NCBI RefSeq assembly: GCF_011386835.1 | Contig: NC_088807.1 | Location: 23,436,001-23,500,000 of the forward strand | Length of the DNA: 64,000 bases | Direction: 5' to 3' | Origin: Chrysemys picta bellii | Taxonomy: Eukaryota | In this document: in pieces, positions 1,290 through 64,000 of the stretch | How the letters are laid out: each line of letters opens with the position of its first letter | How positions within the stretch are numbered: the stretch's first letter is position 1 | Program-made: the position numbers and the translations under genes | Notes under the pieces: model-generated | Database searches by the model: none | Seen by the model: the letters and a program-made list of their open reading frames with translations, nothing else | Told to the model about the DNA's origin: nothing

Positions 1290-1470
1290 NNNNNNNNNNN
1301 NNNNNNNNNNNNNNNNNNNNNNNNNNNNNNNNNNNNNNNNNNNNNNNNNNNNNNNNNNNNNNNNNNNNNNNNNNNNNNNNNNNNNNNNNNNNNNNNNNNN
1401 NNNNNNNNNNNNNNNNNNNNNNNNNNNNNNNNNNNNNNNNNNNNNNNNNNNNNNNNNNNNNNNNNNNNNN
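1290..1470. other. Assembly gap (run of N)
   Basis: Ns seen directly. Confidence 0.99.
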
Positions 1471-9185: not shown

Positions 9186-12100
9186 TCAGGGGGGCCCCAG
9201 CTGGGGCTGGACGGGCATCTTCACAGTCAGCACCTGTGGGGAGACGAGGGGGCGATGAGTGGGGAGGGGGCCGGGGGGGCGTAGAGCTACCCCTGAGCAG
9301 CGAGGCGTGGGCGGGCTCATGGGGCAGGGGCCACTGAGAAGGGGGAGGAGTTCCAGCCTGGTGGGAGGGGGCACACCTGAGGGGGCAGGGTCACGACAGA
9401 AAAGAGGGGGCCACAGAAGGCGAGGCCACAGCCAGAGGGGGAGGAGTCACACCCTGGGGCGGGGGAGGAGCCATACATTGGGGGTGGTATGGGAGTTTTT
9501 GCCCTAGGGGATGAGAGCTTGCCCCACCCTGATGCAGAGGGGCAGGATTCCCTATGGGGGCAGGGACAGGAGGGAGAATGGGGGGCTCCCCGGGGGGGCA
9601 GGGACAGAGGGTTCCCCAGGGGGTTGGATGGCAGGGGGGTATGGGGAGGTTCCCCGGGGTGGGCAGTGACGGGGTGGTTCCCGAGGGGGCTGGGGGCAAT
9701 GGGGAGGTTCCTCAGGGGGGCAAGAACAGGGCGGTTCCCCAGGTGGCTGGATGGCGGGGGGCAATGGGGGGTTCCCCAGGGGGCGCGGTGGGCAATGGGG
9801 AGTTCCCAGGGGGCTGGATGGCGATGGGCAATAGGGTGGTTCCCCAGATGGGCAGGGACGAGGGGGTTTCCCAAGAGAACTAGATAGAGGGGGGAAATGG
9901 GGGGATACCTGGGGGACTGGATGGCAGAGGGCAATGGGGGATTCCCCAGTGGGGCAGGGATAGGGGGGTTCCCTAGGGGGCTGGGTGGCGGGGGGCAATG
10001 GGGGGTTCCCCGGGGGGGCAGGGATAGGGGGGTTCCCCGGGGGGCTAGATGACGGGAAGCAATGGGGGGCTCCCCAGGTGGCAATGGGGGGTTCCCCAGG
10101 GGGCTGGTTGGCGGGGGGCAATGGGAGTTCCCCGGGGGGCTCACCGCGGTGCGCCGGTGGAAGCGGGCGCGGCTGCGCTCCGGGACGATGTCGTGGGGGA
10201 TGTAGATGTCGAGGACGTAGGGGTCCGGGCCCCCCCGCAGCACGACCCGGTCCTGCCCCAGCTCCAGGGAGAGCTCCCGTGCCGAGCCCTGCGGGAGGGG
10301 TCATGAGAGCCTGTGGGGAGAGAACTGCCCCACGGGCAGCACCCCCGCCCCACAGCGCCCCCCTGCACGGAGAGACCCGCCTCACAGCACCCCCTGTGGG
10401 GACAGACCCGCCCCCAGCTGGCACCCCTGACCCACAGCGCCCCCTGCAGGGAGAGACCCGCCCCCCAACTGGCACCCCCGCCCCACAGCGCCCCCTGAGG
10501 GGACAAACCCGCTTCCAGCCGGCGCCCCTGCCCCACAGCACCCCCTGGGGGGACAGACCCACCCCCCAGCTGGCACCCCTGCCCCACAGCACCCCAAGAC
10601 CTGCCACATGGCCAGCACCCCCACCCCACAGCGCCCCCTGCGGGGACAGACCCGGCCCCCAGCCAGCGTCCCACCACCCCCTGCTGGGACAGACCCGCCC
10701 CCCCCAGCCAGCACCCCGCCCCCCCTGCTGGGACAGACAAACAGACCCGAGGCTGGAGCAGCCAGGAACTCCCCCGAGCAGAACTCACCACTCTGGGCAG
10801 GTGGATCTCGGCCAGCAGGAATTCGGGGGACCCTCCCGCCGGCTCTGCCAGGATGGTGAATTTGGGGAGCACAGGGGAGCTGTGGAAAGAAATGGGGGTG
10901 GGGAGGGCAGGCGGTCACAGAGGGCCAGGTCTGAGCTCCCTGCCCCACACGGCACAACAGCCAGTGCCCCACTGGGGAGGGGCCGCATGGCAGTGAGGGG
11001 GGACCCAGCAGGGAGGGAGCTGTGGGGGGAGGGGATTTCAGCACCCAGTAAAAATCCCTGTCTGCCCCCCCCCATCCCCCTTTGCCCCAAGGCCCGGCCA
11101 TGGACCCAGCCCCCCGAGTCTGTCTGGGGACGGCACAACCCCATGGGGCTCTGGCTTGTCTCCCACAGGGGACACGCCCAGGCCTGGGCTCTCTGGTCGA
11201 TTTCTCTCGCCATGTCAATTTCAGCAATGGGAGGGGGGGGCCTTTAGCAGCCTCTCCCACAGGCACACACCGCCCCCCCCAGCATACACAGCCCCCTCCA
11301 CCAATCAACTAGCCAGGGAACCATTTCAACCAGGCCAGCCAGACCCCTGCAATCACGTCAGTCTGATTACCACATCGCCTTCCCCACGCACTGGATTTCA
11401 CCGCCCCGCCCTTCCCATCCCGCTGCCCGGAGCCCCTTGTGCCTGACGCCAGCGCAAAGCTGGGGTGCTCGGCTTTTTGGGGGTGCTGGAGAATCTTTTG
11501 TAGCCCCTGAGGCTCACAAGAGACCCACAGTTCTAGGCTTCCCCCACCCCGCTGGAGCTGGGCACGGTCGGCTCAGAACAGTTGTATTTTCCATCCCTGG
11601 GTGCGTGCCAGATGGGGGAGAGCCCATTGCACTCCTGGGGGGATAGGGGGGGTTCAGACACACCAGCTTTTTTCCTCATTACAAATGGAGCCAGCGGAAC
11701 TCTCTGCCACTGGATTTCCAAAGCAGCAGCCCGCAATCAGAGAACAGCGGTCACGGGGGGGGGGTAGGGGGGGATTGGGGAGAGGGTTGTTAAAATCCAC
11801 AGCATCCCAAGGAGCTAGACCCCCAGGGGGCAGAGTAATCAGACACCCCCCCACTCACCTGAAGTCCATCTCCTGTATAACGGGGCTAGACTTGGTGCGG
11901 ATGGTCTGTCCCGAGATGGAGCCCATGAACTTCCGGTTCTTCAGGATTCGCCACCCTACAGAGTGGTGGGGAAGGGGTTAATGGGGAGGGGCAGATTGGG
12001 GGTGTGGAATAAGAGCCCCCCTACCTCCCACAGTCCTGCCAGTGCCCCTCATTCCCAATCCGCAGCCCCGTGCTAGCCCAGCCCAGCCCGCCCCCAGCCC

Positions 12101-14264
12101 TGCCAATGCCCCTGACTCCCAACCCACAGCCCCTGCTAGCCCAGCCCTGGGCTTCCCCCATCCCAGCCCTGCCGGTGCCCCTCACTCCTGACCCGCAGCC
12201 CCCGCTAGCCCAGCCCAGCCCCCCCCCCAGCCCTGCCAATGCCCCTCACTCCCGACTCGCAGCCCCTGCTAGCCCAGCCCTGGGCTTCCCCCAGCCCTGC
12301 CGGTGCCCCTCACTCCCGACCCGCAGTCCCTGCTAGCCCATCCCAGCCCTGCCGGTGCCCCTCACTCCTGACCCGCAGCCCCTGCTCGCCCATCCCAGCC
12401 CTGCTGGTGCCCCTCACTCCCACCTTGCAGCGCCTGCTAGCCCAGCCCTGCCCCTACCCAGCCCTGCCGGTGCCCCTCACTCCCAACCCGCAGCCCCTGC
12501 TAGCCCAGCCCTGGGCTCCCCCAGCTCTGCCGGTGCTGCTCACACCCGACCCTGGACGGTACCCGGGTGATTGACGTCCATCTTGTACTTGTCTGCCAGC
12601 CCCTCCAGGGCTACGGTGATGAAGAACTCTTTGAAGAAAGGGTCAGCCTGGCACAGAGAAAGGGCAGGGTCAGCGGGTCCCAGGGGACAGCCTGGAGACC
12701 ACTAGGGAGCTGCATCCCCCCCCCCGCCCCCCACATTGACTCCCCCATAGCTGCGGGGGGGGGGCCCGGCCCAGCAGGGGGCGCTTACCTCCACTTTGCT
12801 GAAGAAGCCGGAGTTGATGACCACGTCGTACGCGATGCAGCCGTTCCCGCCTGCGACAGAGAATGACTGTAAGCGCTCTGAGCTCCCCTCGCCCCGCGGC
12901 CGGGGCTCAGACCCAGTGCGGCCTGATCTCTGGGGCCGGGTGGGAGCCAGCGCCCCCGGAGGGGAACAGCCCCGTGCCCCATTCCCCACCCCCTGAGCCA
13001 GCCAGTCCCTACCATGGGGCCAGGTGGGAGTCAGCATCCCCTAGAGGGAAAGGCCATGTGTCCCATTTCCTGCCCCCCAAGCCAGCCAGCCCCCGCCCTG
13101 GGGCCCCCTACAGGGATAAGGGACAGGAGTCCTTGCTGAGGATTGGGTGTCACAGAGATCCCAACAGTAGGTGTTTGTATGCAGGCGGAGCCAGGGGTCA
13201 CCGTGGGAGGTTCCACCCATAGGGCTGTGGGGTCACAGCGGGGGGTGGGGGGTGGCTCACTATTGTCCAGCTCGGCGTGGGGCTCCCCAAGGCTCATGGG
13301 GATGCGGAAGGAGGAGGCGCTGTCCGACTCGATCAGACACTCCAGCTCCTGGTGGCTGAGGTCGGGGGGCGCCGGGATGTGCAGCGACCGGCAGATGTTC
13401 ACAAACACCTTCTCCTGGGAGCCCGCGTGGGTCTTAATGCAGAAGCCTGGAGAAAGAGGGAAAGGAAGGGGTTGGTGCCCCTCACTCCTGACCCACAGCC
13501 CCCTAGCCCTGGGCTCCCCCGGCCCAAACTCCATACCAGGCTGAGGCTGGATCGGCTTCGAGTCGCGCACCGAAGGCATCGCACTCTGGATCTTCTGGGT
13601 GGCCTGCAGGGAAAGGGGGATGAGACAGGCACTGGACCCCACCACACCCACCCAGTGGTCCCTCCAGACCCACACGCCTGCGATGAGGCCCCAGCACAGA
13701 CAGGTCATTGTGAATGAACCCACAACTCCTCACACACACACACCCCGGATCCCAGCTCGCCTCAACTCAATCGCTGCATCACCTAGAACGAATGAGAGTG
13801 GGACCAAGGGGATCTCACCAGTCACCGATTCCCCCATCCGATCCCACCAGCCCTCACAGGGTTGATCCTGCCCCACCAGATCCCATCAGCCCCCCGCTTC
13901 CTCCTCCCAGGGGCTGATTCCTCTGTCAGCTCCCTTGGCCAGATCCCACCTACCACAGCTATCAGAGTGCTGCAAACCCTGCAGGTGGGAAGGGAGCAGA
14001 GGCCACTGGGTCGACACCGCACCAAGAGATCCCTGCTGAGACCCAGCCCTGCCGGCTCCGAGGGCTTGCTACTCCCCCACAGGGCCCCACAAGCAGAGCC
14101 AGCCTTCTGCCCCCACAACACTCCCCAGTGCAGCCCTGCACCCGGGGGGGTGCGGGCAGGAGCTGGGCCCGCTCACAGACCTGGAGCAGCAGCTGTCTGA
14201 ACTCCTCATCGTCTTCCTCCTCCAGCTCTGCCGACAGCAGGGACTTGTCCGTCTGGGAGGCCAT
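9186..14264 (-). CDS. PIH1D1: PIH1 domain-containing protein 1 (R2TP co-chaperone), 9 coding exons, 287 aa
   Basis: Exons 14264-14181, 13603-13537, 13446-13261, 12850-12789, 12647-12563, 11955-11859, 10879-10789, 10288-10145, 9233-9186; all GT-AG, phases compatible, total 864 nt. Motifs IQPQPGFCIKT, KVFVNIC, FRIPMSLGEPHAELD, AYDVVINS, WRILKNRKFMGSI. An acceptor at 14287-14288 implies an upstream non-coding exon. Confidence 0.96.
9560..10140. repeat. Degenerate G-rich minisatellite, PIH1D1 intron 8
   Basis: Recurrent ggggttccccagggggctgg...gggcaatg. Confidence 0.75.
10325..10650. repeat. Minisatellite with CTCF-like motif, PIH1D1 intron 7
   Basis: Repeated cccacagcgccccctg...ggg(ga/ac)agacc. 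Confidence 0.75.
12060..12540. repeat. C-rich minisatellite, PIH1D1 intron 5
   Basis: Repeated cccagccctgccggtgcccctcactcc...cgcagcccctgctagc. Confidence 0.8.
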
Positions 14265-18300: not shown

Positions 18301-21300
18301 CCCAGAGCCAGGGCAGAACCCAGGAGTCCTGTTTCCCAGCACACCCCTGCTCTAACCACTAGACACCACTCCCCCTCAGGCCTGGGGAGAGAACCCAGGA
18401 GTCCTGGCTACCCGCTCTGACCTCTTTCTTCCTCTACCTCCCCCCCCCAGGGGTGGTCGCTGCCGTGGTTACCTGGAATTCCCCATTGCTGTCGCTGGCC
18501 TGGAAAATCTGCCCAGCTCTAGCCATGGGTAGGTGTGTGTGTGTGGGGGTTGCCCCACTCTGTGCCCCCCACGTGTGTTCCCTTGGGATCCCCTCGCCCC
18601 TCTTGGGGGCCAGCCCAACCCTCTCGCTTGGAGTTCACCCCCCCACCTCCATATTTCTATCCCCCGGGTCCTCTTGGGGGGTGTCACGTGGTTCTGAGTC
18701 TCCCCCAGCTCCTGTGTGTCTCACCTAGAGCTTCCCCACACCCCCCTTCTAAGGGGAAGGGGTCGCCCAGCGGGGATCCCCCCCCTGTGATTGTCCCTGT
18801 CTGGGGGTCCCCCTGTGCCTGCCCCGTGTGGTCCCCTCTGAGGCCCCCTCTTCCCTTTTTGGGGGTCCCCCTTCTCTGAGCCCCCTGCAGGCCCTGCCCT
18901 GAGCCCCCCACATGTGGTCCCCCTCTGAGGCCCCCTCTGTGGGGGTCCCCCTGCCCTGAGCTCCATGTGCCCCCCTCTTGACCCCCATCTACCCCCCCAG
19001 GGAACACCGTGGTTCTCCTCCCACCCCCCCGTGCCCGGCTCTCTGCCCTGCTGCTGGCCGAGCTGGGGGCCCAGGCCGGGCTGCCCCCAGGGGTGCTGAA
19101 TGTGCTGACGGGGGAGGGGGCGCTGGCCGGGGGGCTGGCTGCCCACGCCGGGGTGGACGCTGTGGCCGTGGCTGGCTCCGTGGAGGTACGTGCTTCCAGG
19201 AGGGGGGGGGGGGCTCTCCCCCTGACCCCATGTGCCAGAGGGCTGGTCTGTGGGGGGGTGGAATTGGGGGGCTGGTTTCTTGGGGGGAGCTGCCATGGTC
19301 TAGGCTGGGGGGATGGGAGGGGGCTCTGGAGAGCTGAGCTGAGAGGGGAGTGGGGTGCCCTGAAGGGAGGGGGCCGCTGTGACTTGGAGGGGCCTGGGGG
19401 GAGGGGGCTGGACCCCGGGGGTAGCTGGACTAGGGTGGGGGGCTGGGGACCTAGGCCATGGGGGGTGCTGGGCTGGTGGAGTTGGGGGCTGCCCTGGCCC
19501 CATTCCCAGCGCTCCCCCTCCCCTCCCTGCAGGTGGGGCGCTCGCTGCGCCGTGCCACGGCCGGCAGGGGCCCCCGGCTCTCGCTGCAGCTGGGGGGTGA
19601 CACCCTGGCCATCGTCTTCGACTCGGCCGACCTGGATGGAGCTGCCGTGGGGCTGAGCAATGCCGTGAGCTGCCAGCGGGGCCCGGTGAGCAGGGAGCGC
19701 GGCCTTCCTCTAGGGGGCGCCAGCTGTCGCGGGGGTGGGGAATGGGGCCTGGGGCCTGTCCCCTCTAGGGGGCGCCAGCTCTCATCCGGCCCTAGGGCAG
19801 GGACTGGCTGGCTCAGAGGGACGGGGAATGGGGCTCGGGGCCTGTCCCCTCTAGGGGGCGCTGGCTCCCATCCGGCCCCAGGGCAGGGACTGGCTGGCTC
19901 AGGGGGGTGGGGAATGGGGCAGGGGCCTGTCCCCTCTAGGGGGCGCTGGCTCCCATCTGGTCCCCAGGGCAGGGACTGGCTGGCTCAGGGGGGTGGGGAA
20001 TGGGGAAGGGGCCTGTCCCCTCTAGGGGGCGCTGGCTCCCATCTGGTCCCCAGGGCAGGGACTGGCTGGCTCAGGGGGGTGGGGAATGGGGCAGGGGCCT
20101 GTCCCCTCTAGGGGGCACCGGCTCCCATCTGGTCCCCAGGGCAGGGACTGGCTGGCTCAGGGGGGTGGGGAATGGGGCCCGGGGCCTGTCCCCTCCAGGG
20201 GGCGCCAGCTCCCATCTGGTCCCCAGGGCAGGGACTGGCTGGCTCAGGGGGGTGGGGAATGGGGCCCGGGGCCTGTCCCCTCTAGGGGGCGCTGGCTCCC
20301 ATCTGGTCCCCAGGGCAGGGACTGGCTGGCTCAGGGGGGTGGGGAATGGGGCCCGGGGCCTGTCCCCTCTAGGGGGCGCTGGCTCCCATCTGGTCCCCAG
20401 GGCAGGGACTGGCTGGCTCAGGGGGGCAGGGAACAGGCCCCTCTGGATTGCGACTGCATTGCTGTGAGGGCCTGTGCCCTGCAGGGGGCGCTGGTGTGTC
20501 ATTAACCCCTTTCCCCCCAGGCTCCCGGCGCCGGGGCGCTGCTGCTGGTGCAGGAGGCCGTGGCCGGGGCGCTGCTGCAGCGGCTGAGGGCGCGGCTGGG
20601 GAAGCTGCGTGTTGGGGACCCGCTGGACAAGGCCATGGACGGGGGGGGCCCTGGCAGACGAAGCCCAGCGGGGCGCCATAGAGGCCTACGTGGAGGAGGC
20701 CCGGGCAGAGGGGGCTGAGGTGAGGGGCTGGGTCTAGTGTGTAGGGGGGGGGGGCTGGGAGCCCGGACTCCTGGGTTCTATCCCTGGCTCCGGGAGGGGA
20801 GGGGAGGGGGGGCTGGGAGCCCGGACTCCTGGGTTCTCTCCCCGGCTCGTGGGTGGGGGGGGGGGGATCTAGTGGTTAGAGCGGGGGGTGGGGAAGGATT
20901 GGGAGCTCGGACTCCTGGGTTCTCTCCCTGGCTCCGGGGGGGGGGGGGGTCTAGTGGTTAGAGCATGGGGGGGAGGTTGGGAGCCCGGACTCCTGGGTTC
21001 TTTCCCCGGCTCTGGGAGGGGAGTGCCTGTCTCTGGGGCTCACGTGCTGCTGTCTCCCCACTCACAGATCTTCCAGGCGTGGGCAGCGCTCCCGGCCCGA
21101 GGGCCCTTCTACCCCCCGACTATGATCACCGGAGTGGCCACCACCTCGCGCTGCGTCCGGGAGGAGGTAGGGGGCTGTGACGAACTGGGACTGTTCTTGC
21201 TGGGGTGTGTGAATGCTGACAGGGGAGTGTGACTAGGATGGTCTGCATCGGGGGATGGGAGCCGGCCCAAGGGAACATACCTGAGCTTGTAACATGAGAA

Positions 21301-24300
21301 CCCAGGAGGGGGTTGGAGGTCAGATGACTCCGGGGCCCGGGAAACTGAACAAAGGCTGTGGGAGGGGTCGCTGAGGGCAGAGTGCTGGAAGCTGGCTGGA
21401 AGGAGGCTGGAGAGATGGCTGGGAGGCAGAGATGGCTCTGACCCCCCCCCCCCCAAGGGGGTGGGCTGGCATGCCCTGGGACCCCAAGCTGGACCTAACT
21501 GAGGGGGGCCCTGTTGTCTGTGCCTGCAAGACCTGTCTTGGACTGTATTCCTGTCATCCAAATAAACCTTCTGCTTTACTGGCTGGCTGAGAGTCATGGT
21601 GAATCGCAGGAAGCCGGGGGTGCAGGGCCCTGAGTTCCCCAATACTCCGTGACAAGTCCCAGTTCGTCACATCTCTCCCCCCTTCGAGACCGAACTGAGC
21701 AGGGTCACTTTAGCCAGTGACCCGGGGAAGTTCGAACCTACCCCCGTTCCCATGGATGCCCCCGCATCCCTCCAGTTCCTTGGTGAGAATTACACCAGGC
21801 CCCTTCCGTTCCACGCCCCCCCTTAGGTCGGGGGTGCTTGATGGCACTCGCAGTTCGCATGTGGGAAGGTTTATGCGGCCTGTGCCCTTTCCCCACCCCC
21901 ATACCTCTGGGGTTCCAACTGGGCTGTGGTCTTCTCCCAGCGCTCCAGTCTGGAGGTCTGTGCTTTGGGCTCTCTTGGTTTAGAGCCGCCCTTTTAACCT
22001 TGGCCACCCTCTGGAAAGGATCCTTTATGCTGGGCAAGGGTCCTAAAGCTCTTTTCCCCTTGTCCCAGGCCTTCCTCCCCCTCTGACAGGGGTCACAGGA
22101 TCCGCAGTACTGTCGGACAGTAACAAAGACCCCAGGCCAGTAAAAGCTCCGTAGCAGCCTCTGCTGGGTACGCCAGGTTCCCTGGTGCCCTGAGAGGGGA
22201 ATGTCATGGGCCCGGCACAGCAGCTGGCGGCGATACTTCTGGGGTACCACCAGCTGCCTCCTGATCCCCCCTGACTCCATTTTCCCTGGGGGAGCCCATT
22301 CTCGGTACAGGAACCCCTTCTCCCACAGGAACCTTTTCCGGCCACCTCGTCCCATGGTCTGTACCGCATTGAGGTCGGCCAGGTCCCTTATCTTCCGCAA
22401 GGAGGGATCTCTCTGTAACTCGGCCTGGAACTCAGCAGCTGGGACAGGGATGGCCACCTGCTCTTTCTCGCCCGCTGGGTCCGAAGCTGCAGCCTCCCTG
22501 CGCCGTGTCCCTGGGCGTTCCCTCCCCACCAGGTTAGGGTCCTGCGCCTCAGGCAAGGCACCCCCCCCAAGGCCAGGGCGCAGTGCCCCTCGCCGGCTCT
22601 GACTGCGGGTCACAACTAAGGCGGTCTGGGGGCTGCTTGGCCAGTCCTCTAGGTCCCCCCCCATCAACACCTCAGTGGGCAAATGGTGGTGCACTCCCAC
22701 GTCCTTGGGGCCCTCCTTGGCCCCCCATTTCAGGTGTACCCTCGCTACGGGAACCTTGAATGGGGTCCCGCCCACCCCGGTCAGGGTCAGGAAGGTGTTG
22801 GGCACCACCCGATCTGGGGCCACCACCTCGGGCCGGGCCAGTGTCACCTCTGCGCCCGTGTCCCAGTATCCATAAACTTTCTTCCCATCCACCTCCAGGG
22901 GAACAAGGCACTCGCTCCGCAGGGACAGCCCCGCGCCAACCCTGTAAACGGAGAACTTTGAATCCGGAGCATCTGGCCCCCCAGAGAAGCTGGCCTGGGG
23001 CCCTTCTCTCTCTTGAGCAGTTGATAAGCTGCCAGCCCCTCTTGCGTTAGAAGCCTGCCCCTCGTCCGTCTGGGCCTCTACCAAGTTAACCCGGTGCGGG
23101 TTCGGTCTGCTCAGTCTGTCCTTGAGCTTGGGGCACTGGGCCCGAACGTGGCCTCTTCGGCCGCAGTAATAGCAGCTCAGGTCCCGTGGGTCCCCTCGAG
23201 CCGGTCGGTTGTCCCTGACGCTGGGCATTCCCCGTGGGAGGGGATTCCCCATATTCCCCCTTTGGGAGGTCCCAGGGTGACTCTCTCTCTGCATCGCGGC
23301 GGGCCTGTTCCTTTGGGGCTCCTCCCTGCCACCCCCTGACCGGCTCTTTACAAACTCATCAGCCAGCTGCCCGGCGTGTCGCGGGTTCTCTGGCTTTCTG
23401 TCCACCAACCACAGCCTCAGGTCGGATGGGCACCGCTCATACAGTTGCTCCAGTACCAGCAGTTTAATCAGGTCCTCCTTCGTCTGGGCCCCACCAGCCC
23501 ACTTGCTGGCGTATCTTTCCATGCGGGCGGCTAGTTGCAGATATGAGATCTCAGGGGTTTTATCCTGACTCCGGAACCTTTCCCGGTACATCTCAGGAGT
23601 CAGCCCAAACTCTCGTAGCAGGGCCTTTTTGAATAGTTCGTAGTCCCCTTTCTCTGCCTCTCCCAGTTGGCGGTACAATGCCACGGATTTGGGGTCCAGT
23701 AAGGGGGTAAGGACCCGGAGTCTGTCCGCGGGATCAACCCGGTGCAGCTCGCAGGCCGTCTCAAAGGCCTCCAGGAAGTCATCCATGTCCTCCCCCTCCT
23801 TGTATGGGGCCATGATGCACTTATCAAAGCTCCGTGCAGTCCTGGGTCCCCCCTCACTCACCGCAGCCGGGGGTTCGCTGCCCTTCAATCTCGCCAGTTC
23901 CAGGTCATGCTGACGCTGTCTCTCATTCTCCTCCCGTTCATGCTGTCTCTGTCTCTCTTCACGCTGATGCTGTCTCTCTTCATGCTGTCTCTGTTGTTCA
24001 CGATCCTCCAGCTCCCTCAGTTTTAGCTCTTTCTCCCATTCCAGCCAATTCCGCTCCCCGGATGCCGAACGTCGCCGGGAGGATCCTCTGCTGGCCGGCG
24101 AGCTTCGCCGGGGGGACCCCCTGCTGGCCGGGGGGGTCACGGCGCCTTCGGTATTTGCTGGGCTCCTCCCCACCCTTCCCCTAGGCATAGGAAGGAGGGG
24201 TCTCGGGAAGCCCTCAGCAGCGGGCTGACCACTCCCAGCTGGGACAGACACTGGTGCCTGCGCTGCATTTGCCAGGCTGCTTCCCTGAGACACAGGGATC

Positions 24301-27300
24301 AGTTCATTCGCGCGATCTTCCGCCTCCAGCTGGGCAATGAGCTGTTCTTTGGTGAGCCTCCCAATGCGCAGCCGCCTCTGCTTGCACAGCTCCACCAGGT
24401 CGCTCTTAAGCCGCTTGGCATACATCTTCCTGCTGGCCACTCACCGGCCTGTGTGCTCACAGCTCCCCACAGTTCCCAGGGGGCCCCCTAGTGTGCCAGC
24501 CCTTCTCGAGGTCACCGCCTCTCCGCCAGGGTCGAGCTGCAGACTCCTCCGCCCCTGGGACCACTCGCTGCGATCCCCCCGGGGGACCCTGTTACTGCAA
24601 AAGTCCTTCTCGCTGGTCACACACTCCCAGGGGTAATAACCGTCTCTCTCCCACTCTTCAGCAGGCCTGGTTCCCGTCCATCCCCCTTCGTTTTACTGCT
24701 CCCCAGTCACTTACTGCAGGAAGCGCCGTCCACGGGGTGCAGTAGATCCCACCGCTGCCACCAGTTGTCACGGAGTATTGGGGAACTCAGGGCCCTGCAC
24801 CCCCGGCTTCCTGCGATTCACCATGACTCTCAGCCAGCCAGTAAAGCAGAAGGTTTATTTGGATGACAGGAATACAGTCCAAGACAGGTCTTGCAGGCAC
24901 AGACAACAGGGCCCCCCTCAGTTAGGTCCAGCTTGGGGTCCCAGGGCATGCCAGCCCACCCCCTTGGGGGGGGGGGGTCAGAGCCATCTCTGCCTCCCAG
25001 CCATCTCTCCAGCCTCCTTCCAGCCTGCTTCCAGCACTCTGCCCTCAGCGACCCCTCCCACAGCCTTTGTTCAGTTTCCCGGGCCCCGGAGTCATCTGAC
25101 CTCCAACCCCCTCCTGGGTTCTCATGTTACAAGCTCAGGTATGTTCCCTTGGGCCGGCTCCCATCCCCCGATGCAGACCATCCTAGTCACACTCCCCTGT
25201 CAGCATTCACACACCCCAGCAAGAACAGTCCCAGTTCGTCACAGGGGCGCTCCCCCCCCACCCGCCTGGGGGTCAACCCCGGGCTCCCGCCGCCTGCGCG
25301 CCGGACCATGCATGGGGAAGTGGTGACCTCTGGTGGTCACGATCAGAATTGCCGTTCTCTGCTTTTCCTTTGATTTTCCCTCAGCCCTTCCTGCCAGAGG
25401 AGAGCGCCCCCTGCTGTCCCTCTCCCTGCAGCCCAGCGTCCCCTGCTGTCCTCCGCCCCCTGCTGTCCCCCGCCCCGCAGCCCAGCGCCCCCTGCTGTCC
25501 CCTACCCCGCTCCCTGCAGCCCAGCGCCCCCTGCTGTCCCTCTTCCTGCAGCCCAGCGTCCCCTGCTGTCCCCTACCCCGCTCCCCGCAGCCCAGCGCCC
25601 CCTGCTGTCCCCCGCCCCGCAGCCCAGCGCCCCCTGCTGTCCCCTACCCCGCTCCCTGCAGCCCAGCGCCCCCTGCTGTCCCTCTCCCTGCAGCCCAGCG
25701 TCCCCTGCTGTCCCCCGCCCCCTGCTGTCCCCTACCCCGCTCCCCGCAGCCCAGCGCCCCCTGCTGTCCCCCGCCCCGCAGCCCAGCGCCCCCTGCTGTC
25801 CCCTTCCCCGCTCCCTGCAGCCCAGCGCCCCCTGCTGTCCCTCTCCCTGCAGCCCAGCGCCCCCTGCTGTCCCCCGCCCCCTGCTGTCCCCTTCCCCGCT
25901 CCCTGCAGCCCAGCGCCCCCTGCTGTCCCTCTCCCTGCAGCCCAGCCCCCCCTGCTGTCCCCCGCCCCGCTCCCCGCAGCCCAGCACCCCCTGCTGAGCC
26001 CCCCGCACCTCCCTGCAGCCCAGCGCCCCCTGCAGCCCAGCACCCCCTACCTCCCAAGACTTCTCTTGTCCTCTGCTGCAGATCCTTGGGCCGGTGCTGG
26101 TGGTCCTGTCCTTCCGGACCGCCAAGGAGGCCGTGGCACTGGGGAACAACCGCCCCTCCGGGCTGGCAGCCAGCGTCTGGACCGAGAACCTGCCCCTGGC
26201 CATGGAGGTGGCGCAAAGGTTAGTTCTGAGCCCACGGTCCGGCTCCCCCCACCCCACCCCGTGAATCCGCTCCCAGAGCCGCAGGGATCCGGTTCAGGTT
26301 TCCACCCCTCTGCCAAGGAAACTTCAGTCCCAGGGCCACAGGTCTCCCCCGGACCTGTCTGTCCACCCCACTTGGTTACGCTCGAATCTCCGGGTTCACA
26401 GCGCCCCAATTTCACTAGCGTCCCTTGAGTTCAACCCTCCCTCGAGCACTCGGCACCGGGAGGTCCTCGCCGTAAAACCAAAGCAAAGTTTATTGGCCGC
26501 GGGAGAAGACGAAGATTCACGGAGAAGCCAGCGTGGCAGAATCCGCTTTGCATTTGGGTATCGTGTAGACGCACGGCACCCGTGTCGGTTTGATTTTTGA
26601 ATTCACTCTTACAGGCAGACTTATGGGGTTTAAGCGGGTTTTGGGGGTTTCTCTTTGGCTGGATTGACACGTTCCCAGTCGCGGGGGGGCGCTGGCCGAC
26701 CGATATTTAACGCCCCGCAGCCGCTGAGATCTAGAGTTACAGTCTGAACCCGTGAGGCAGTCTGCAGCGGAAGTCAGCTCCCCCGCGAGGGTTTTCACAC
26801 GTGGCCTGGCCCTACGCTTCGACTGCTCTCGGTGGAAAATCTTTCCGTGGCTTGGTGCGGGCGGGCGGCGTTTGCAGATGGAAAAACCCCTCCTCCCCCA
26901 CCTGCCTGCGCCTTCCTCCTGGCTCAGGAGAGATTTCGCCCCCAAGGGTCAGTCCGGGCGGCGCCTGGCCAGCCGAGAGAAGAGAGATCCTTGGCTAACC
27001 GGCCGGAGACGTGTTCCCAGGGGCAGATCCGTTAGAGAAAGAGCCGGGCTGGATTTCAGAATTGCCCGTGATGGAGAATCGCCCGCGAGCCTGGGGAAAT
27101 CGTGCCCGGGGTTAATCACGGTCACCGTCAGAAACTGACGTCTTGTTTCCAGTCTGAGGGCGTCGCGCCCCGACGCCCAGCTGCTGGCCCCCGATTCTGC
27201 ACGTTGGTTCGATTTCTGAGCTTCCACTCGGTCCCCCACTTTCCCGGCTTTTTCTCGGTCTCCCAAGACGAGCGGCGAGTTTGGTGCGTTCTGTCAGACC

Positions 27301-30300
27301 CCGCAGCGGGGGTGTGGGGGATCTCGCAGGGGAAACGCGCCCATTTGTCACTGTGGGGCCAGCCTGGGGTCCCTGGGCTCTGACCAACCCCTCCCTTCTC
27401 CCCCTTCCCCACCGATCTCGCTTTCTGTTGCAGCCTGCAGGTCGGCACCGTCTGGATCAACGGGCAGAACCTGTTTGACGCGGCCGCGGGCGTCGGGGGA
27501 ACCAAGGAGAGCGGGAACGGCCGGGATGGAGGCAAGGAGGTGCGTGGGGCCGGGCCGGGGAGGGGGAGATATCAGGCTGGAGGGCCCATGGGGCTCACTT
27601 GTCCCTTCCTTCCTCTCCCAGGGTCTGTACGAGTATGTCAGACCGAGCTGGCAGAGCCGGCCCCGGCCAGGCCCCGCGGAGCTGGACTACAAAACGTTTG
27701 CTGCGTCCTCTGGGGCCGCCCCGCCCCCCGTTCCCGGGCACAGTGGGGTCGCCCGCCCCGAACTGGAGGAAAACATGCCAAGGTACTAACGACTCCTGGT
27801 CTTCCAGACCTGGCGCCCCTCGCCCGGTGCTGGGACGCGGCCCCTCTGGGGTGGGGCGCGGGGGCTCGGTACACGGGGATCCCTCACCCGGCACTGAGAT
27901 GCGGCCCCTCTGGGGTGGAGCGCGGGGGGCTCGTTATACGGGGACCCCTCGCCTGGCGCTGGGATGCGGCCCCTCTGGGGTGGAGCGCGGGGGGCTCGTT
28001 ATATGGGGACCGCTCGCCTGGCGCTGGGATGCGGCCCCTCTGGGGTGGGGTGCGGGGGGCTCGTTATACGGGGACCAATGTTCCCTCTAAATTTTTCCAT
28101 CCACATGCGGACTGAATTTTGTTCTGTGAAGCACCACTAGGGAGGTGACATGCGGCTGTGCGCCATCACCTCCGTACTTTCGGGCACCCCTTATCCCCCC
28201 GCGAGGTCGCAGCTCGTCCCTAGCTGGGTCTCAGGGAAGGTCTGTCTTCAGGTGACGTCTGCAGCACCTATCAGTTCATTCCTCCAGCCTCCTTCCACGA
28301 GGATGAAATGCAGCCACCTCTGGGGAGGGAAATCAGCAGCCAGCTAGCACAGAGAGCCCCGGGCAGTCGTTTGGAAAGAGACGGGGAATTTTGGATAGGA
28401 AGCGTCTTTTCCTCTTATGCAAAATGCTGGAGCTATTTAATGTTCAGACGGGGCTTCAGCTGTCAAAGTCTCCTCTGGAGGTAAAATATAATACGGCCAC
28501 GTTTGAAATCCAAGTAAACGTTTCTAAATCAAGACATTAAGGCTTAAAATAATTGTAAAAAACTCAACTTCCCTCCTCCTGTATTAACAATATGAAGCAC
28601 TTTAAAAGCCCCGTTCGCTATTCGTGTTTTCCGCTGGATTAGCTCGGCCAATGAGTCAGGTTCACCTTTGGATCTCCTGCCCGCACACAATGTCCCAGTG
28701 TCTCGGTTATTGCAGTGAAACTCATAGGTCGCTATGTTTGCACGGCACTTTCCAAACACGTGGGCTCGGGCAGACTTTCACTTGACGTGACATTTTTCTC
28801 ACGCTCCTTTCCGTGAGAAAAACTCTGCAGGGTCAGGCCTGTAGGTAAACCCCGTCTCCTGCTGCCTGTGATGACGTGGGAATGTTCTTAATGTTTTCTC
28901 GGAATACTGGATGGGTGCCTCAGTTTCCCCTATGCAGTTCTTAGGTGGGGGGAGGGTAAGAGGGTGTGATTGTTGCAGAGCCCTAGAGGGAGGTGTGATG
29001 GTGTCTGCACAGAGAAGGGCCGACGCCCTGTCTCCTGGCAACTGATGGCCTGGTCCCCTCCCCTGCAAGGTGCCAACTGAAGGTGTTGGAGAACAAAGAG
29101 ATCAGGTGGCTCCTGGCCCGGGAAAGAGACAAAGGCCAGAGGAGGGGGTGTCAGTTTGGAGCTGGCTGGGGAAATGGAGGGAGGCGCCGACCCGGGATCT
29201 GGGCTCCCCACCCCCCAAGAGGGATCTGACTGAGGGGTCCTGTTCTCTGTACCTACAAGCTCTGTTCTAGACTGTCTTCCTGTCGGCTAAGAAACCTCCA
29301 ATGTTACTGGCTGGCTGAGAGTCCCGGTGAATTGCAGGAAGTGGGGGGTGCAGGGCCCTGACTCCCCCCGCACTCGGTGACACTGCCCATGAAAAACTTT
29401 GCAAACACGGGGAGGGGGAGTTTAAACCCACCAAGGGGGATGGTTGTCGTTGGAAATCAGACACAGACGTTTCTGTTTTGGTCATTTCCATTTAAAACAC
29501 AAACCGAAAAGCCAACGCTCTTTAGCGCTTTGCGTTTGTAAATCTCAAAGGGGTTTACAGCATTGTTCCCCTCTGGGAAATGGGGAAACTGAGGCACCGT
29601 GGGGGTGAGGTGACTTCCCAAGGCCGCACAGAAACTCAGTGGCAGAGCTGGGGAAAGACCCAAAGTCTCTTCATTCCCCAGGCTCTGGGGCTGCGGCGGG
29701 GAGAGAGGACTCCCGTCCCTGCTGCAGCCCCGGGGCTGGGGCCGGGGGAGAGGCATCTCTCCCCCCCCGCATAGCCCTGCATGGCCCAAGTTCCCCCAAA
29801 GCCCCATCACCACCCCCCCACCTCACCCCACTGCTCCCGCCCACCCGACACATCCTCCACACTCACCCGTGTGTGCACCTTAGAGGGAACACAGACGCGG
29901 ACCCCTCGTCCAGCGCCGAGATGCGACCCCTCTGGGGTGGAGCGTGGGGGCTGGGTAGACAGGGATCCCCAGCCCGGCGATGGGACGCGGCCCCTCTGGG
30001 GCGGGGCGTGGGGGCTTTCCAATGAGCGTGAGGGTTCAGGGATCACCTTGCCCCCCCTCCCTCTTGTGTCTCTGCAGGGTGGACAGGACCTACAAGCTCT
30101 ACTACGGAGGGGCTCAGAAGCGACCCGAGGGAATGGCCTCGCTCCCCGTCCTCGACCCTGCCGGCAACGTGCTGGCGTATGTGGCGGACGGCAGCGCCAA
30201 GGACATCCGCAACGCTGTGGAGGCTGCTCACAAGGCCGCGCCGGGGTGAGATGGGGAGCAGCTCGGGACGCTTGGGTTCTCTCCCCGGCTCTGGGAGGGG

Positions 30301-33300: not shown

Positions 33301-36300
33301 GTGAACCCAGGAGTCCTGGCTCCCAGTCCCACTGCTCTAACCACTAGCCCCCGCTCCCCTCCCAGAGCCGAGAGCAGTAACCATAGCTCTGTTGGTGCTG
33401 GCTCCTGTCCCGCCCCTTCTGCGCTGCCCCGGCTGGGAGCGACCCCACACACCAATCCGGGCTTACGCTGCTTGAAACAGACCCATCCCCCCCACCTGCG
33501 ATCGGGGTCCCCATGGGGCCGGGCGCTGCACAGACCCCTCCCCTCACCCGATCTCAAGCGAGGGTCCCCAAGGCGTTACCCCGATGCTTGTGCAGAGCCC
33601 TGCAGGGCTACGTTTGGACCCGCGTCCGATCCACAAACATGGTCCGCAGCTGTCCACCGATTTGCCGGGCTCTACGCACCTAGATCAAGACTGAGAAGGC
33701 CACGCTCAGGGCAGACTGCACGAAACAGGGGAGCCACCCCCAAAACCTGGTGGTTTACAACCAGTAATACGGGTTTCTGCAGGCCCCCGCTGGTTCACAA
33801 GAAGCCGAAACACAATCCCCCGTTAGGCATTTCCAGCCCGATTCACCGGCCACACAGCGGGTTTTTATAGTGAGAAGTTACTAAAAACCCAATTCCCCAT
33901 GCACGAGGTTTTACTGATCCCAAAGGATGTGCCACCCCCCGGTCCATGTCACTTCACATCTCACCCAAACATCCCGCCGGCCCAACTAGCGAACGGGTTT
34001 ATTTGGAAGACAACAGAAAAGCGGAGAGTTACTAATGGGGGGGAAAGAACCACGTAGGTTATGAGCGGGTTCACGTCCTTAAAGCAGTGTGTTGCAGTCT
34101 CCGGGCGGGCACACGCGTCTCTCTGGGACGCTCCCAACTGGCTAGAAGCCCAGGGGCGGTGCAGGTGGGGCGGCCGAGCCCTTGGAGACCCCAGGCCCCT
34201 GCCTGTGGCTTGTCCCCGGTCACAAGCCAGAGGTGGCCGGCTCGGGCCGGTGGTTTCTCTTTTCTCGCTGTCCCGGAATTTGAGCCCCGTGTGGGACAGC
34301 CCTGTTCTGTGTCTAGCCGTTCAATTTCCTCGTTACACTCATTGACATAAGGCGGAGGTCCCCAGAGTGTGGGGCGTACCCCCTGGTGGGGGGGACATGA
34401 ACGCACATCCAGTGGGGGACAACAGCGGGGCCCGGGCCAGCCCGCTCACCTGGCCCCGGGGCTGAGTCTGGGGGCAAGCCCTGCTGCAGTTCCGCCCCCT
34501 GGCCACGGCCCCAGACCCCCCCCCCCCAGCCTTGGCCCCCTTACCCCTGCCCCCCCCCTGAGTCGCAGGCCCGGCTCTGGGGGGGCGTGGATATGGGTAA
34601 GGGGGGCCCACCCTCAAAAGTTTGGGGACCGGCATGAGCCAGTCGTTCATTAGAATCGGAATCGTTAAGTGAAGACAATGTCGGTCAAAGGAGTCTCACA
34701 TCTTTGATCTTATGGCTGACGACAGTCACCTGCGTAATCTAGAGGCCATTAAGACATGAAAGGGACTTCGCACCTCCCGGCTCCTTTGATGGCTTTGGTA
34801 ACCGGCTCCCAGGAGCTCGGTAACCACAGACACACACGCTCGGCATCGACGCTTCGATTCCTCTCGACACGAGGAAACGGGGTCGAAATTGTTCGGCGAC
34901 TGCAGCGCATAGGTGGGGCCCTACCAAATTCCCGGCTCCTTTGGGTCCGTTTCACGGTCGTCGGATTTTTCGCAGCGTCTGTTTCACGGTTTCAGATCTT
35001 TCCATCTGAAATCTCGCGGTGTTGTCACCGGACGCGGGCGAGGGGGACACCCAAAAGAAGGTGGGGTGTCCGCAAGGCTATTTTGGGGGGAGTCACGGGA
35101 TTGCCGCCCTTACTTCTGCCCTCAGAGATGGGCGTCTGGAGCCCAGAGCACATTAGGAGCACCCGCTCCTCTCTGGCCACCCAGCTCTGTGAAATCTGGT
35201 CTCCCCTACACCAGCCAGATGTCCCGGGGGGGTGAGATTTCACGATCCATGATGTCGGTAGGGCCCAAACATAGTCACCCTGCATGGAGCAGCTTTAACG
35301 CTTTCACACCCACTGGGCAGCACTGCAAAACGATGGGGAAACTGAGGCACGCACAGGGGACTCCTGCGAATACAGCAGAAGAGTCCTGCGCACAAAGTGC
35401 AGCTCCCGGCCTGCGTGACCTCAGGGGGCGGTGCAAGTGGAGCGTTTCCGTTCACTTCCTCGTTAAGGAGCCCGTTAATTGCCTTCCCGAGTCACTTGTT
35501 TCTGCTGCTAAGAGCTGGGAACAATTAATGCCGGCCCATGTGGACCCCGCTGGCCTGGCCCCAGGCACAGGCCATGTGTTCCCTTCGGTGGCTGCATCCG
35601 ACCACGCGAATGTTTCTCGCTTCGGCCCATGGCGTCCGCCAGGGATTTGTCTGTGCGACCCTCCCCATCAGTTCTCTGGTTCTCTGTCCTGGCCTACGCA
35701 ACCAGCTCCCCGAGACAGGAGAGAACCCAGGAGTCCTGGCTCCCAACTGCCCCCCCGCCCCCAGCTCTAAGCACTAGACCCCACTCCCCTCCCTGCACTG
35801 GGATAGAACCCAGGAGTCCTGGCTCCCCACCCCCGCTGGTTCCGGCAGCTAATAGGGCCCATCTGCTTCCTCCCCCACTCAGATCTTCGACACCTCGGAC
35901 GTCCCCGGGGGGGTGGTGAATATTGTGACGGGGAATCGGGACCATCTGAGCCGGACGCTGGCCCAGCACCAGGATGTTCACGCCATGTGGTACTTCGGGT
36001 CTCCGCAGGTGAGAGCGATTCTGCCCCCACCGCCTGTCCCCTGTCACGGAGTCCCCGGGCGATGCTCTGGAACTGCTCCCCCCAAAGCCAGTCAGGACTT
36101 TGGGGAGCCTCCTCTCCCTCAGAGCAGACTGTTTTCAGGGCAAGAAGCTCACACGGCTTCACCTCCTGGGTCTCTCCCGGAGCATTCAGCATATGCCCCT
36201 CCGTGCGCTTCCCACAGCGAGTCCGCCCCAGCGGGGTCCTGGGGAAGCCAGAGAGTCCTGCACCCCCACTTCGCAGGCAGACGTGACTCTCAGCCAGCCA

Positions 36301-63560: not shown

Positions 63561-64000
63561 TGTGACGAACTGGGACTGTTCTTACCGTGGTCTGTGAATG
63601 CTGACAGGGGAGTGTGGCTGGGATAGTCTGCATTGCGGGATGGGAGTCTGCCCGAAGGCGCATACCTGAGTGTGTAATATGAGAACCCAGGAAGGGGTTG
63701 AAGGCCAGGTGACACCTTGGCCCGGGAAACTGAACAAAGGCGGTGGGAGGGGTCGCTGAAGGCAGAGTGTTGGAAGCGAGCTGGAGAGATGGCTGGGGGG
63801 GCAGAGATGGCTCTGACCTCCCAAGGGGGGCTGGGCTGGGATGCCCTGGGACCCCAAGATGAACCTAACTGAGGGGGTCCTGTTGTCGGTGCCTGCAAGA
63901 CCTGTCTTGGACTGTATTCCTGTCATCCAAATAAACCTTCTGCTTTACTGGCTGGCTGAGAGTCATGGTGAATCGCAGGAAGCCGGGGGTGCAGGGCCCT
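63561..64000 (+). mobile_element. LTR of the same Gypsy family as 21176-25243 (runs off the window)
   Basis: Starts TGTGACGAACTGGGACTGTTCTT; collinear with 21176-21630, including AATAAA. Confidence 0.9.

What the first reader, a model, noticed from the sequence alone, without database searches (positions are those of the whole stretch)
21171..25248. Gmr1-like Gypsy element whose two LTRs are inverted rather than direct
Seen: 21176-21654 is the reverse complement of 24766-25243 (by eye about 1 substitution plus homopolymer differences; the ORF track shows the same [10 protein letters not shown]... peptide on opposite strands). On the minus strand the 5' LTR is followed by a tRNA-Leu PBS as normal. 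After the PPT, only the first 17 nt of a normal 3' LTR appear (21671-21655), then a complete LTR in flipped orientation. A perfect 5-bp TSD (GGGGC) flanks the whole unit. Established: LTR retrotransposons have direct LTRs. Inference: the element now has ~480-bp terminal inverted repeats with two U3-type ends. The intact TSD fits integration in this form (aberrant strand transfer during reverse transcription) or a precise local inversion. If other copies share the layout, this is an undescribed non-autonomous LTR-derived element class.
Basis: partly seen in the sequence, partly recalled or inferred. Interest (0 to 1): 0.85.

Follow-up and report, generated by a model that had tools for sequence, protein, structure and literature searches.

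The report
Turtle LTR retrotransposon with inverted LTRs
A very young, still polymorphic copy of an abundant turtle Gmr1-like retrotransposon was inserted in one event with its second LTR flipped, so both outer ends are "U3" ends; it looks like a one-off by-product of faulty DNA copying, not a new kind of mobile element.

Summary
21176-21654 is the reverse complement of 24766-25243, with one substitution and one C-run length difference. On the minus strand the order is 5' LTR, AC spacer, an 18/18 tRNA-Leu-AAG primer site, a 900-aa gag(SCAN)-CCHC-protease-integrase-zinc-finger ORF, a polypurine tract, U3 nt 1-17, then a complete inverted LTR. GGGGC flanks the unit.

Contigs from two public runs join the flanks with a single GGGGC. 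The duplication is therefore real, and the whole unit is absent from some animals.

Nine sibling copies fetched from Chrysemys picta bellii all have direct LTRs. So do the contigs of most copies in the read sets. Of the runs scored, only one appears to hold a word spanning the odd junction. The flipped LTR also provides no R region or poly(A) signal in the sense direction, so this form cannot copy itself.

Best reading: an aberrant cDNA with two U3 termini was integrated once, in trans. How its right end formed is unresolved: plus-strand copy-back, end joining, or one-ended autointegration.

A second, older element with two U3 ends and its own 5-bp duplication turned up by chance (L006). That suggests a recurrent by-product rather than a propagating class. 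The scan's notes hold no earlier report of this layout.

The parts
21171..21175 (.). Left copy of the 5-bp target-site duplication, GGGGC (intron positions +5 to +9 of the host gene)
   Evidence: sequence; empty-site contigs carry a single copy.
21176..21654 (+). Complete LTR (U3-R-U5, 479 nt, TGTGAC...GTGACA), inverted relative to the rest of the element. Its U3 nt 1 abuts the duplication. AATAAA lies at 21561-21566 on the + strand.
21655..21671 (-). 17-nt stub equal to U3 nt 1-17 in normal orientation, directly after the polypurine tract. 21654|21655 is the aberrant junction (U5-terminal CA joined to the complement of U3 nt 17).
   Evidence: loose ends at 21655 show that other copies continue with normal U3.
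21672..21682 (-). Polypurine tract GGGGGGAGAGA, identical in the 8 siblings whose ends were read
21738..24440 (-). 900-aa ORF: gag with SCAN-like domain and CCHC knuckle, DTG protease motif, integrase H2C2 zinc domain. No integrase core, RT or RNase H, so the copy is non-autonomous.
   Evidence: 95% identical to P0001.
24746..24763 (-). Primer-binding site TGGTGGCAGCGGTGGGAT, an 18/18 complement of the 3' end of tRNA-Leu-AAG. The AC spacer lies at 24764-24765.
   Evidence: PMC9161985 gives the tRNA-Leu-AAG 3' fragment and its complement.
24766..25243 (-). 5' LTR (478 nt) in normal orientation
25244..25248 (.). Right copy of the target-site duplication, GGGGC
21068..21166 (+). Host exon (aldehyde dehydrogenase, ALDH16-like) ending 9 nt before the insertion point. 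The GT donor is at 21167-21168.
   Evidence: Aldedh profile 344-368
26082..26222 (+). Next host exon. The element therefore sits in the intron between two consecutive ALDH exons.
   Evidence: (Aldedh profile 369-415, E 2e-10)

Best explanation
This is one insertion event of an aberrant cDNA from a very young, high-copy, non-autonomous Gmr1-like (Ty3/Gypsy) family of emydid turtles. The cDNA had a normal left end (5' LTR, tRNA-Leu primer site, gag-PR-IN-zinc-finger ORF, polypurine tract). Its right end was U3 nt 1-17 followed by a whole LTR in reverse. Both outward-facing termini were therefore U3 nt 1, the kind of end made where plus-strand DNA starts at a polypurine tract. Inferred: integrase supplied in trans joined these two U3 termini to the chromosome with the family's usual 5-bp stagger. 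The site lies 9 nt into an intron of an ALDH16-like gene. Also inferred: the right end formed before or at integration, when two plus-strand products that each began at a PPT/U3 border were joined head to head at their 3' ends. One product is a strong-stop U3-R-U5 segment. The other is the long plus strand that had re-entered U3 by 17 nt. Three routes could do this. (1) Reverse transcriptase jumped from one strand to the other (copy-back), about 40%. (2) Two separate cDNA pieces each gave a U3 end and their far ends were joined by host end joining, about 25%. (3) The U5 CA-3' end made a one-ended integrase strand transfer into its own U3, followed by displacement synthesis, about 15%. The product cannot replicate as such. 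The insertion is recent and absent from some animals.
For: The layout and both exact U3 termini abut GGGGC. Empty-site contigs in X16 and X25 bridge 21175 to about 25249-25253 with room for only one GGGGC. Nine siblings from GCA_011386835.2 have the same 3.1-kb interior with direct LTRs; the eight whose ends were read also show the same spacer, PBS and PPT, perfect 5-bp duplications and LTR pairs 99-100% identical. So this copy is the exception in an active family. Contigs from X25 and X1 leave the window exactly at 21655 and continue with normal U3 (table 7). In the 70-nt junction search only X25 held both sampled words; every other run scored held one or none. The window matches the family majority on both sides of the junction (tables 3 and 4), so the rare word is inferred to span the junction. 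The inverted LTR carries AATAAA only on the + strand; the element's sense strand has none for more than 4 kb. A second independent case exists: L006 8658-13480 is an older LTR-PBS-leader unit ending in an inverted copy of its own U3 nt 1-144. It has a GGTGG duplication and 7-8 nt of microhomology at the turn-round point.
Against: No contig listed bridges flank to LTR at this locus, and which run is the assembly's source is unknown. Support for the junction in reads therefore rests on one inferred 31-mer. The junction shows at most 1 nt of microhomology, so annealing-based switching has no direct support in this copy. The exact CA at the junction fits integrase chemistry as well as it fits a template run-off. 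The three sub-mechanisms give the same product and one sequence cannot separate them. The two arms differ at two positions, although they should have been made from the same template; the differences may be RT errors, later mutations or homopolymer noise.
Confidence: 0.78

Rival explanations
1. Several steps after insertion. A normal minus-strand copy inserted at GGGGC. A second copy then inserted in opposite orientation into its 3' LTR at U3 nt 17/18 and collapsed to a solo LTR. The remaining 461 bp of the first copy's LTR was then deleted exactly up to the second LTR's first base, perhaps through the shared TGT at LTR termini.
For: Opposite-orientation nested insertions into an LTR do occur in this family: L005 has a + copy inside the 3' LTR of an older - copy. 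X1 has a contig joining the U5 end to inverted U3 nt 27-1. An adjacent long inverted repeat would be unstable and prone to deletion.
Against: This needs four events within the life of an insertion that is still polymorphic. The + LTR has no duplication of its own (GGGGC on the left, AGTCC on the right), whereas the true nested copy in L005 has one (CCTGG). The deletion would have to end exactly at two LTR termini. The + LTR and the 5' LTR share the long C-run (12-13 C against 6 in the L001 LTRs).
Confidence: 0.07
2. A local inversion of the 3' LTR after a normal insertion, with staggered breaks that duplicated 17 nt at one breakpoint.
For: Staggered-break inversions are known to leave short inverted duplications (established knowledge; not tested here).
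Against: The outer breakpoint would have to coincide to the base with the LTR terminus next to the duplication. The extra 17 nt sits exactly at the U3/PPT border. The second example in L006 has a different geometry that an LTR flip cannot produce.
Confidence: 0.04
3. Assembly or read artefact: the true allele has a normal direct 3' LTR.
For: Three runs of sample S1, including the run that best holds the element as a whole (X1), lack one of the two junction-region words. No listed contig bridges flank to LTR. Palindromic joints elsewhere in the LTR (21580->24805) look like fold-back library artefacts.
Against: A simple flip or fold-back would not create a full LTR plus a 17-nt stub with an exact U3 terminus against the duplication. 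One run (X25) holds both junction-region words. Logan contigs drop low-depth branches off repeats at about 100,000-fold word depth, so absence of the word means little.
Confidence: 0.04
4. One reading: a heritable, propagating class of non-autonomous LTR-derived elements with about 480-bp terminal inverted repeats.
For: A second element with two U3 termini and its own duplication exists (L006). The family integrase evidently accepts two U3 ends.
Against: The two cases have different LTR subfamilies, different junctions and different contents, so they are independent accidents rather than copies of one design. All 9 siblings have direct LTRs. The junction word is rare. There is no sense-oriented R region or poly(A) signal for RNA-based copying. 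No transposase is present.
Confidence: 0.03

Closest known systems
Canonical non-autonomous Gmr1-like (Ty3/Gypsy, Metaviridae) LTR retrotransposons of emydid turtles, e.g. L001 (GCA_011386835.2 CM062319.1, record positions 664962-669019)
   Same: LTR sequence 97% identical and interior 96% identical. Same AC spacer, tRNA-Leu primer site, polypurine tract, gag(SCAN)-PR-IN-zinc-finger ORF, 5-bp duplication and length of about 4.06 kb.
   Different: Siblings have two direct LTRs. Here the 3' LTR is a 17-nt stub plus a complete LTR in reverse, so both termini are U3 ends.
Autointegration 'inversion circles' of retroviruses and LTR retrotransposons (Ty1; Arabidopsis SISYPHUS, PMC7197481)
   Same: A U5-terminal CA is joined in inverted orientation to a site inside the element's own DNA. 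The two LTRs end up inverted relative to each other.
   Different: Those are extrachromosomal circular dead ends with two internal junctions and a duplicated internal target. Here there is one internal junction, a complete inverted LTR and a chromosomal insertion with a host duplication.
Complex LTR retrotransposons made before integration by template switching or cDNA recombination (Sabot and Schulman 2007, PMC1950507; bioRxiv 10.1101/452573)
   Same: Abnormal cDNA architectures that are still integrated as one unit with flanking duplications.
   Different: Those are LTR-interior-LTR-interior-LTR tandems with direct LTRs. No inverted-LTR form was found in the passages searched.
DIRS1-like tyrosine-recombinase retroelements (PMC7192593, PMC3950715)
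   Same: Inverted terminal repeats, plus a short internal segment matching a repeat end.
   Different: DIRS elements encode a tyrosine recombinase, have no tRNA primer site and make no target duplication. This element has a DDE-integrase-type 5-bp duplication, a primer site and a polypurine tract, and its siblings have direct LTRs.
Isolated endogenous retrovirus with inverted LTR, mentioned in passing (guppy foamy-like ERV, PMC5210030)
   Same: A provirus-like insert reported with inverted LTRs.
   Different: That report gives no junction, duplication or mechanism. Whether it is the same kind of product is unknown.

Membership tests
LTR retrotransposon, Ty3/Gypsy, Gmr1-like clade | LTRs with TG...CA termini | tested here: met
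   TGTGAC...GTGACA in both LTRs
LTR retrotransposon, Ty3/Gypsy, Gmr1-like clade | tRNA primer-binding site next to the 5' LTR and polypurine tract next to the 3' LTR | tested here: met
   18/18 complement of the tRNA-Leu-AAG 3' end. GGGGGGAGAGA precedes U3 nt 1 here and in the 8 siblings read.
LTR retrotransposon, Ty3/Gypsy, Gmr1-like clade | Short target-site duplication made by a DDE integrase | tested here: met
   GGGGC on both sides and single in empty-site contigs. Eight siblings have perfect 5-bp duplications.
LTR retrotransposon, Ty3/Gypsy, Gmr1-like clade | Gag with SCAN-like capsid C-terminal domain and CCHC knuckle; pol order PR-IN-RT-RH (integrase before RT) | tested here: inconclusive
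   SCAN, CCHC and Integrase_H2C2 are present in that order. This copy has no RT. Autonomous relatives P0008 and P0009 (66-71% identical) show H2C2-rve-SH3 before RVT_1-RNase H.
LTR retrotransposon (canonical structure) | Two LTRs in direct orientation | tested here: not met
   The LTRs are inverted. Nine siblings meet this feature.
DIRS-like retroelements | Tyrosine recombinase gene; no target duplication; no tRNA primer site | tested here: not met
   The 900-aa ORF hits only SCAN, CCHC and Integrase_H2C2; the other ORFs are short and were not scanned. A duplication and a primer site are present.
Autointegration inversion product | U5 CA end joined in inverted orientation to an internal site of the same DNA | tested here: met
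   ...GTGACA at 21654 is joined to the complement of U3 nt 17.
Autointegration inversion product | Second junction, with 5-bp duplication of the internal target flanking the inverted segment | tested here: not met
   The inverted LTR is complete and runs to the chromosomal duplication. No second internal junction exists.
Fold-back / TIR DNA transposon | Transposase, or TIRs unrelated to LTRs | tested here: not met
   The arms are full LTRs of a family whose other members are ordinary retrotransposons. No transposase domain was found.

The most novel reading that the evidence does not exclude
cDNAs with two U3 ends ('copy-back' cDNAs) are a regular, integration-competent by-product of these turtle Gmr1-like families. 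Inverted-LTR insertions with intact target duplications would then form a recurrent category of LTR-retrotransposon insertion that has not been described. Each one would place two LTR promoters in convergent orientation.
Probability: 0.3. Interest if true: 0.6.

Novelty: new variant of a known kind. Interest (0 to 1): 0.45.

Why it matters
It is a natural, dated record that a retrotransposon integrase can insert a cDNA whose two ends are both U3 ends. The empty allele is still present in some animals. It also shows that plus-strand synthesis can turn back on itself and still yield an integrated product. I found these forms discussed only as extrachromosomal dead ends (autointegration circles).

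If such insertions are recurrent, standard LTR-finding software, which demands direct LTRs, misses them systematically. The L006 case hints that they are recurrent.

Two local consequences can be tested. First, the flipped LTR puts a poly(A) signal (21561-21566) and a promoter in the sense direction of an ALDH16-like gene, about 400 nt after a splice donor. Second, the two LTR promoters now converge across the interior of a family present at very high copy number. Convergent transcription is a plausible source of double-stranded RNA against that family. This is speculative; no RNA data were examined.

Tried and rejected
- A 60-nt junction query for sequencing runs had too few indexed words. 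The 70-nt query had only two, so the read-level test is weak. The caps then prevented a second read laying.
- The window's 900-aa ORF is not on record as a called gene, so the same locus could not be fetched from another assembly.
- No tRNA gene lies in the window or the loci. The primer-site assignment was checked against published tRNA-Leu-AAG 3' fragments instead.
- A DIRS-like reading was rejected: there is a duplication, a primer site and no recombinase.
- A concerted autointegration inversion circle was rejected: it predicts a cut LTR and a second junction, not a complete inverted LTR.
- A simple fold-back chimera was rejected: it would read LTR followed by its own complement, not LTR followed by the 17-nt stub.
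- The palindromic joints 21580->24805 (X1, depth 1728) and 21616->24841 (X7, depth 560) turn back at a 4-nt inverted match inside the LTR. They were considered as evidence for multi-copy inverted LTRs. I set them aside because 0.2-0.5% fold-back chimeras at a repeat with about 100,000-fold word depth are an expected library artefact.
- The X1 joint 21654->25217 (U5 end joined to inverted U3 nt 27-1) could be a second copy-back junction or an ordinary nested insertion. It could not be resolved.
- Literature searches for integrated LTR elements with inverted LTRs found only DIRS elements and one passing mention.
Full report
**What is there.** The repeat finder and a BLAST of the element against the window both show 21175-21655 and 24765-25244 as a 481-nt inverted repeat, 99.6% complementary. 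An alignment of the two LTRs shows one substitution. The inverted copy has T at 21393 and the 5' LTR has A at 25026; the two L001 LTRs also have A there. The only other difference is a C-run of 13 versus 12.

Read on the minus strand, the element has these parts, in order:
- a 478-nt 5' LTR (25243..24766, TGTGAC...GTGACA);
- an AC spacer;
- the primer-binding site TGGTGGCAGCGGTGGGAT;
- a 900-aa ORF (24440..21738);
- the polypurine tract GGGGGGAGAGA (21682..21672);
- the first 17 nt of U3 (21671..21655);
- a complete LTR in reverse (21654..21176).

GGGGC lies on both sides (21171-21175 and 25244-25248). The primer site is the exact complement of the 18-nt 3' end of tRNA-Leu-AAG as printed in PMC9161985. 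The ORF carries SCAN, CCHC and Integrase_H2C2 domains but no integrase core, RT or RNase H. Autonomous relatives from sea turtles have the order SCAN, CCHC, H2C2, rve, SH3, RVT_1, RNase H. Integrase before RT is the Gmr1 order.

**Is the duplication real, and is the unit one insertion?** Read laying gave the key result. A 337-nt contig of run X16 and a 417-nt contig of run X25 each align to 20996-21175 and then, after three unaligned letters, to 25253 onward. That leaves room for GCT and a C-run one shorter than the window's, but not for a second GGGGC. This is the empty site. It shows that the 4,068-bp unit plus one GGGGC was added in one piece and that the insertion is absent from those samples. 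The tool files them under the same species label as run X1. Both outer junctions are the exact first base of U3 next to the duplication. Only an integrase-type joining is expected to produce such a junction. A chromosomal inversion or deletion would have to hit the LTR terminus to the base.

**What is normal for the family?** The ORF's closest relatives are 'uncharacterized proteins' of Chrysemys picta bellii, 89-95% identical. Further members occur in Malaclemys and Terrapene. I fetched nine loci from GCA_011386835.2. All nine carry the same 3.1-kb interior between direct LTRs. In the eight whose ends I read:
- the spacer, primer site and polypurine tract are the same;
- each has a perfect 5-bp duplication;
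- LTR pairs are 99-100% identical, five of the eight pairs being identical.

Word depths in four runs are around 100,000 over the element, against about 10-26 for the single-copy flank contigs. The family is therefore very abundant and very young. Contigs of X25 and X1 that align from 21655 rightward carry, just before it, the complement of U3 nt 18 onward, which is the ordinary direct 3' LTR (table 7). Several first-reader notes from the same genome describe copies of about 4.0-4.1 kb as young non-autonomous Gmr1-like elements. I did not check those copies.

**Is the odd junction elsewhere?** The 70-nt query centred on 21654|21655 contained only two indexed words. Only X25 held both; every other run scored held one or none. 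The window shows no private letters or indels in 21620-21689 relative to the family majority (tables 3 and 4). Words lying wholly on either side of the junction should therefore be in every run. I infer that the rare word spans the junction. This is weak evidence. Logan contigs drop low-depth branches off high-depth repeats, so absence means little, and no listed contig bridges flank to LTR at this locus. It does argue that the junction exists in reads of at least one run and is not a common family feature.

**Can this form replicate?** The inverted LTR has its AATAAA only on the + strand (21561). On the element's sense strand there is no AATAAA within the flipped LTR or in the next 6 kb, and the first ATTAAA is 4.6 kb away. 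A transcript from the 5' LTR would end in the complement of U5-R rather than in R. The first strand transfer would then have nothing to anneal to (inference from the standard reverse-transcription scheme). Together with the nine normal siblings, this rejects the 'new propagating class' reading for this layout.

**A second case.** I scanned the 240 kb in hand for outward-facing U3 starts with matching flanks. Two pairs turned up: the window's element and one in L006. With the nested young copy (9188-13227 and its CACCT duplication) removed, L006 8658-13480 is a 778-bp unit. It consists of a 557-nt LTR of a related subfamily, an AC spacer, the same primer site with one mismatch, and about 60 nt of leader. 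It ends in an inverted copy of its own U3 nt 1-144. The arms are 92% identical, and GGTGG lies on both sides. The turn-round point lies in 7-8 nt shared by the leader and the inverted U3. The two cases differ in LTR subfamily, content, age and junction, so they are independent events of the same general kind. One unbiased case in about 180 kb of family-rich sequence suggests the kind is not extremely rare.

**Mechanism.**
- Shown: both outer ends are U3 nt 1; the internal junction joins the U5-terminal CA to the complement of U3 nt 17 with at most 1 nt of overlap; the duplication is genuine.
- Inferred: the strand 5'-LTR, then complement of the stub, PPT, interior and 5' LTR-3' begins exactly where plus-strand DNA starts at a polypurine tract. 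The right end is therefore best read as two plus-strand products joined at their 3' ends. One is a strong-stop U3-R-U5 segment. The other is the long plus strand that had crossed the element and re-entered U3 by 17 nt.

Three routes give the same product:
- Reverse transcriptase jumps from one strand to the other (copy-back, or mutual priming). The microhomology in L006 favours this route.
- Two cDNA fragments each contribute a U3 end to a concerted integration, and host end joining closes the gap between their far ends.
- The processed U5 CA-3'OH makes a one-ended strand transfer into the opposite strand of its own U3, followed by displacement synthesis from the upstream plus strand. The exact CA at the window's junction favours this route.

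A full concerted autointegration is excluded. It would cut the LTR and leave a second junction, as described for inversion circles in PMC7197481.

**Rivals.**
- Nested insertion, then solo-LTR formation, then an exact deletion. Nested opposite-orientation insertions are real (L005). However, the + LTR here has no duplication of its own, and four events would be needed in a polymorphic allele.
- A staggered-break inversion needs a breakpoint exactly at the LTR terminus.
- An assembly artefact cannot easily create a full LTR plus a 17-nt stub with an exact terminus, and one run seems to hold the junction.

**Context.** The element lies in an intron of an aldehyde dehydrogenase gene on the + strand. 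Exon 21068-21166 matches Pfam Aldedh positions 344-368 and exon 26082-26222 matches positions 369-415, so they are consecutive. The best solved relatives include the 767-residue ALDH16 structures 6mvu and 6mvr. The insertion point is 9 nt after the exon and leaves GTAGGG intact. The element body is antisense to the gene. The flipped LTR, however, now presents its promoter and poly(A) signal in the gene's sense direction. No RNA data were examined.

**Comparison and novelty.** By sequence the element is a member of a known family, and by structure it is an exception to it. The nearest described phenomena are autointegration inversion circles and TSD-flanked 'complex' LTR elements made before integration (PMC1950507; bioRxiv 10.1101/452573). 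Neither has this form. DIRS elements have inverted repeats but fail every other test. One paper mentions a guppy ERV with 'inverted LTR' without analysis. I rate this a new structural variant of a known kind. It is of moderate interest, mainly as in vivo evidence for U3/U3 integration of copy-back cDNA and as a lead for a genome-wide count.

Noticed in passing
L006:8658-13480 (GCA_011386835.2 CM062337.1), with the young copy 9188-13227 nested inside: An older 778-bp unit: a 557-nt related LTR, the tRNA-Leu primer site and about 60 nt of leader, ending in an inverted copy of its own U3 nt 1-144. A GGTGG duplication lies on both sides, and 7-8 nt of microhomology lie at the turn-round point. This is a second element with two U3 ends.
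   Followed up: partly
window 21068-21166 and 26082-26222: Consecutive exons of an ALDH16-like aldehyde dehydrogenase gene. The insertion lies 9 nt after the splice donor. The flipped LTR puts AATAAA (21561-21566) in the gene's sense direction.
   Followed up: partly
window 21580->24805 (run X1, depth 1728) and 21616->24841 (run X7, depth 560): Contigs in two organisms turn back on the LTR at positions about 405-440, at a 4-nt inverted match (GGCT/AGCC). They are either multi-copy palindromic LTR junctions or fold-back library chimeras at a very high-copy repeat.
   Followed up: no
window 21654->25217 (run X1, depth 65.6): A contig joins the U5-terminal CA to the complement of U3 nt 27-1. This is the same type of junction as the finding but 10 nt further in. 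It is either another copy-back product or a nested insertion elsewhere in that genome.
   Followed up: no
L005:8903-17011: A clean nested insertion. A young + copy (9199-13303, duplication CCTGG) sits inside the 3' LTR of an older - copy at about LTR nt 151. It served as a look-alike control for the finding.
   Followed up: yes
window 63561-64000: An LTR of the same family in + orientation, 87.6% identical, cut by the window end. What follows it could not be seen.
   Followed up: no
window 28866-29385 and 36284-36694: Copies of the related 'LTR-B' subfamily, the one in the L006 unit. They share the first 25 nt or so and the R-U5 part with the main family. They are probably solo LTRs.
   Followed up: no
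window 20008-20444 and 25402-26078: Tandem arrays close to the insertion site: five 87-nt units upstream, and a 71-nt (39+32) array in the same intron downstream. The X25 empty-site contig differs from the window by several small indels in the downstream array.
   Followed up: no
window 20729-21026: Four diverged copies of a 76-nt unit containing GGGAGCCCGGACTCCTGGGTTCT. They look like SINE fragments and lie just upstream of the ALDH exon. Many read-set joints fall in this stretch.
   Followed up: no
window 1290-1470: A run of 181 N, left untouched.
   Followed up: no
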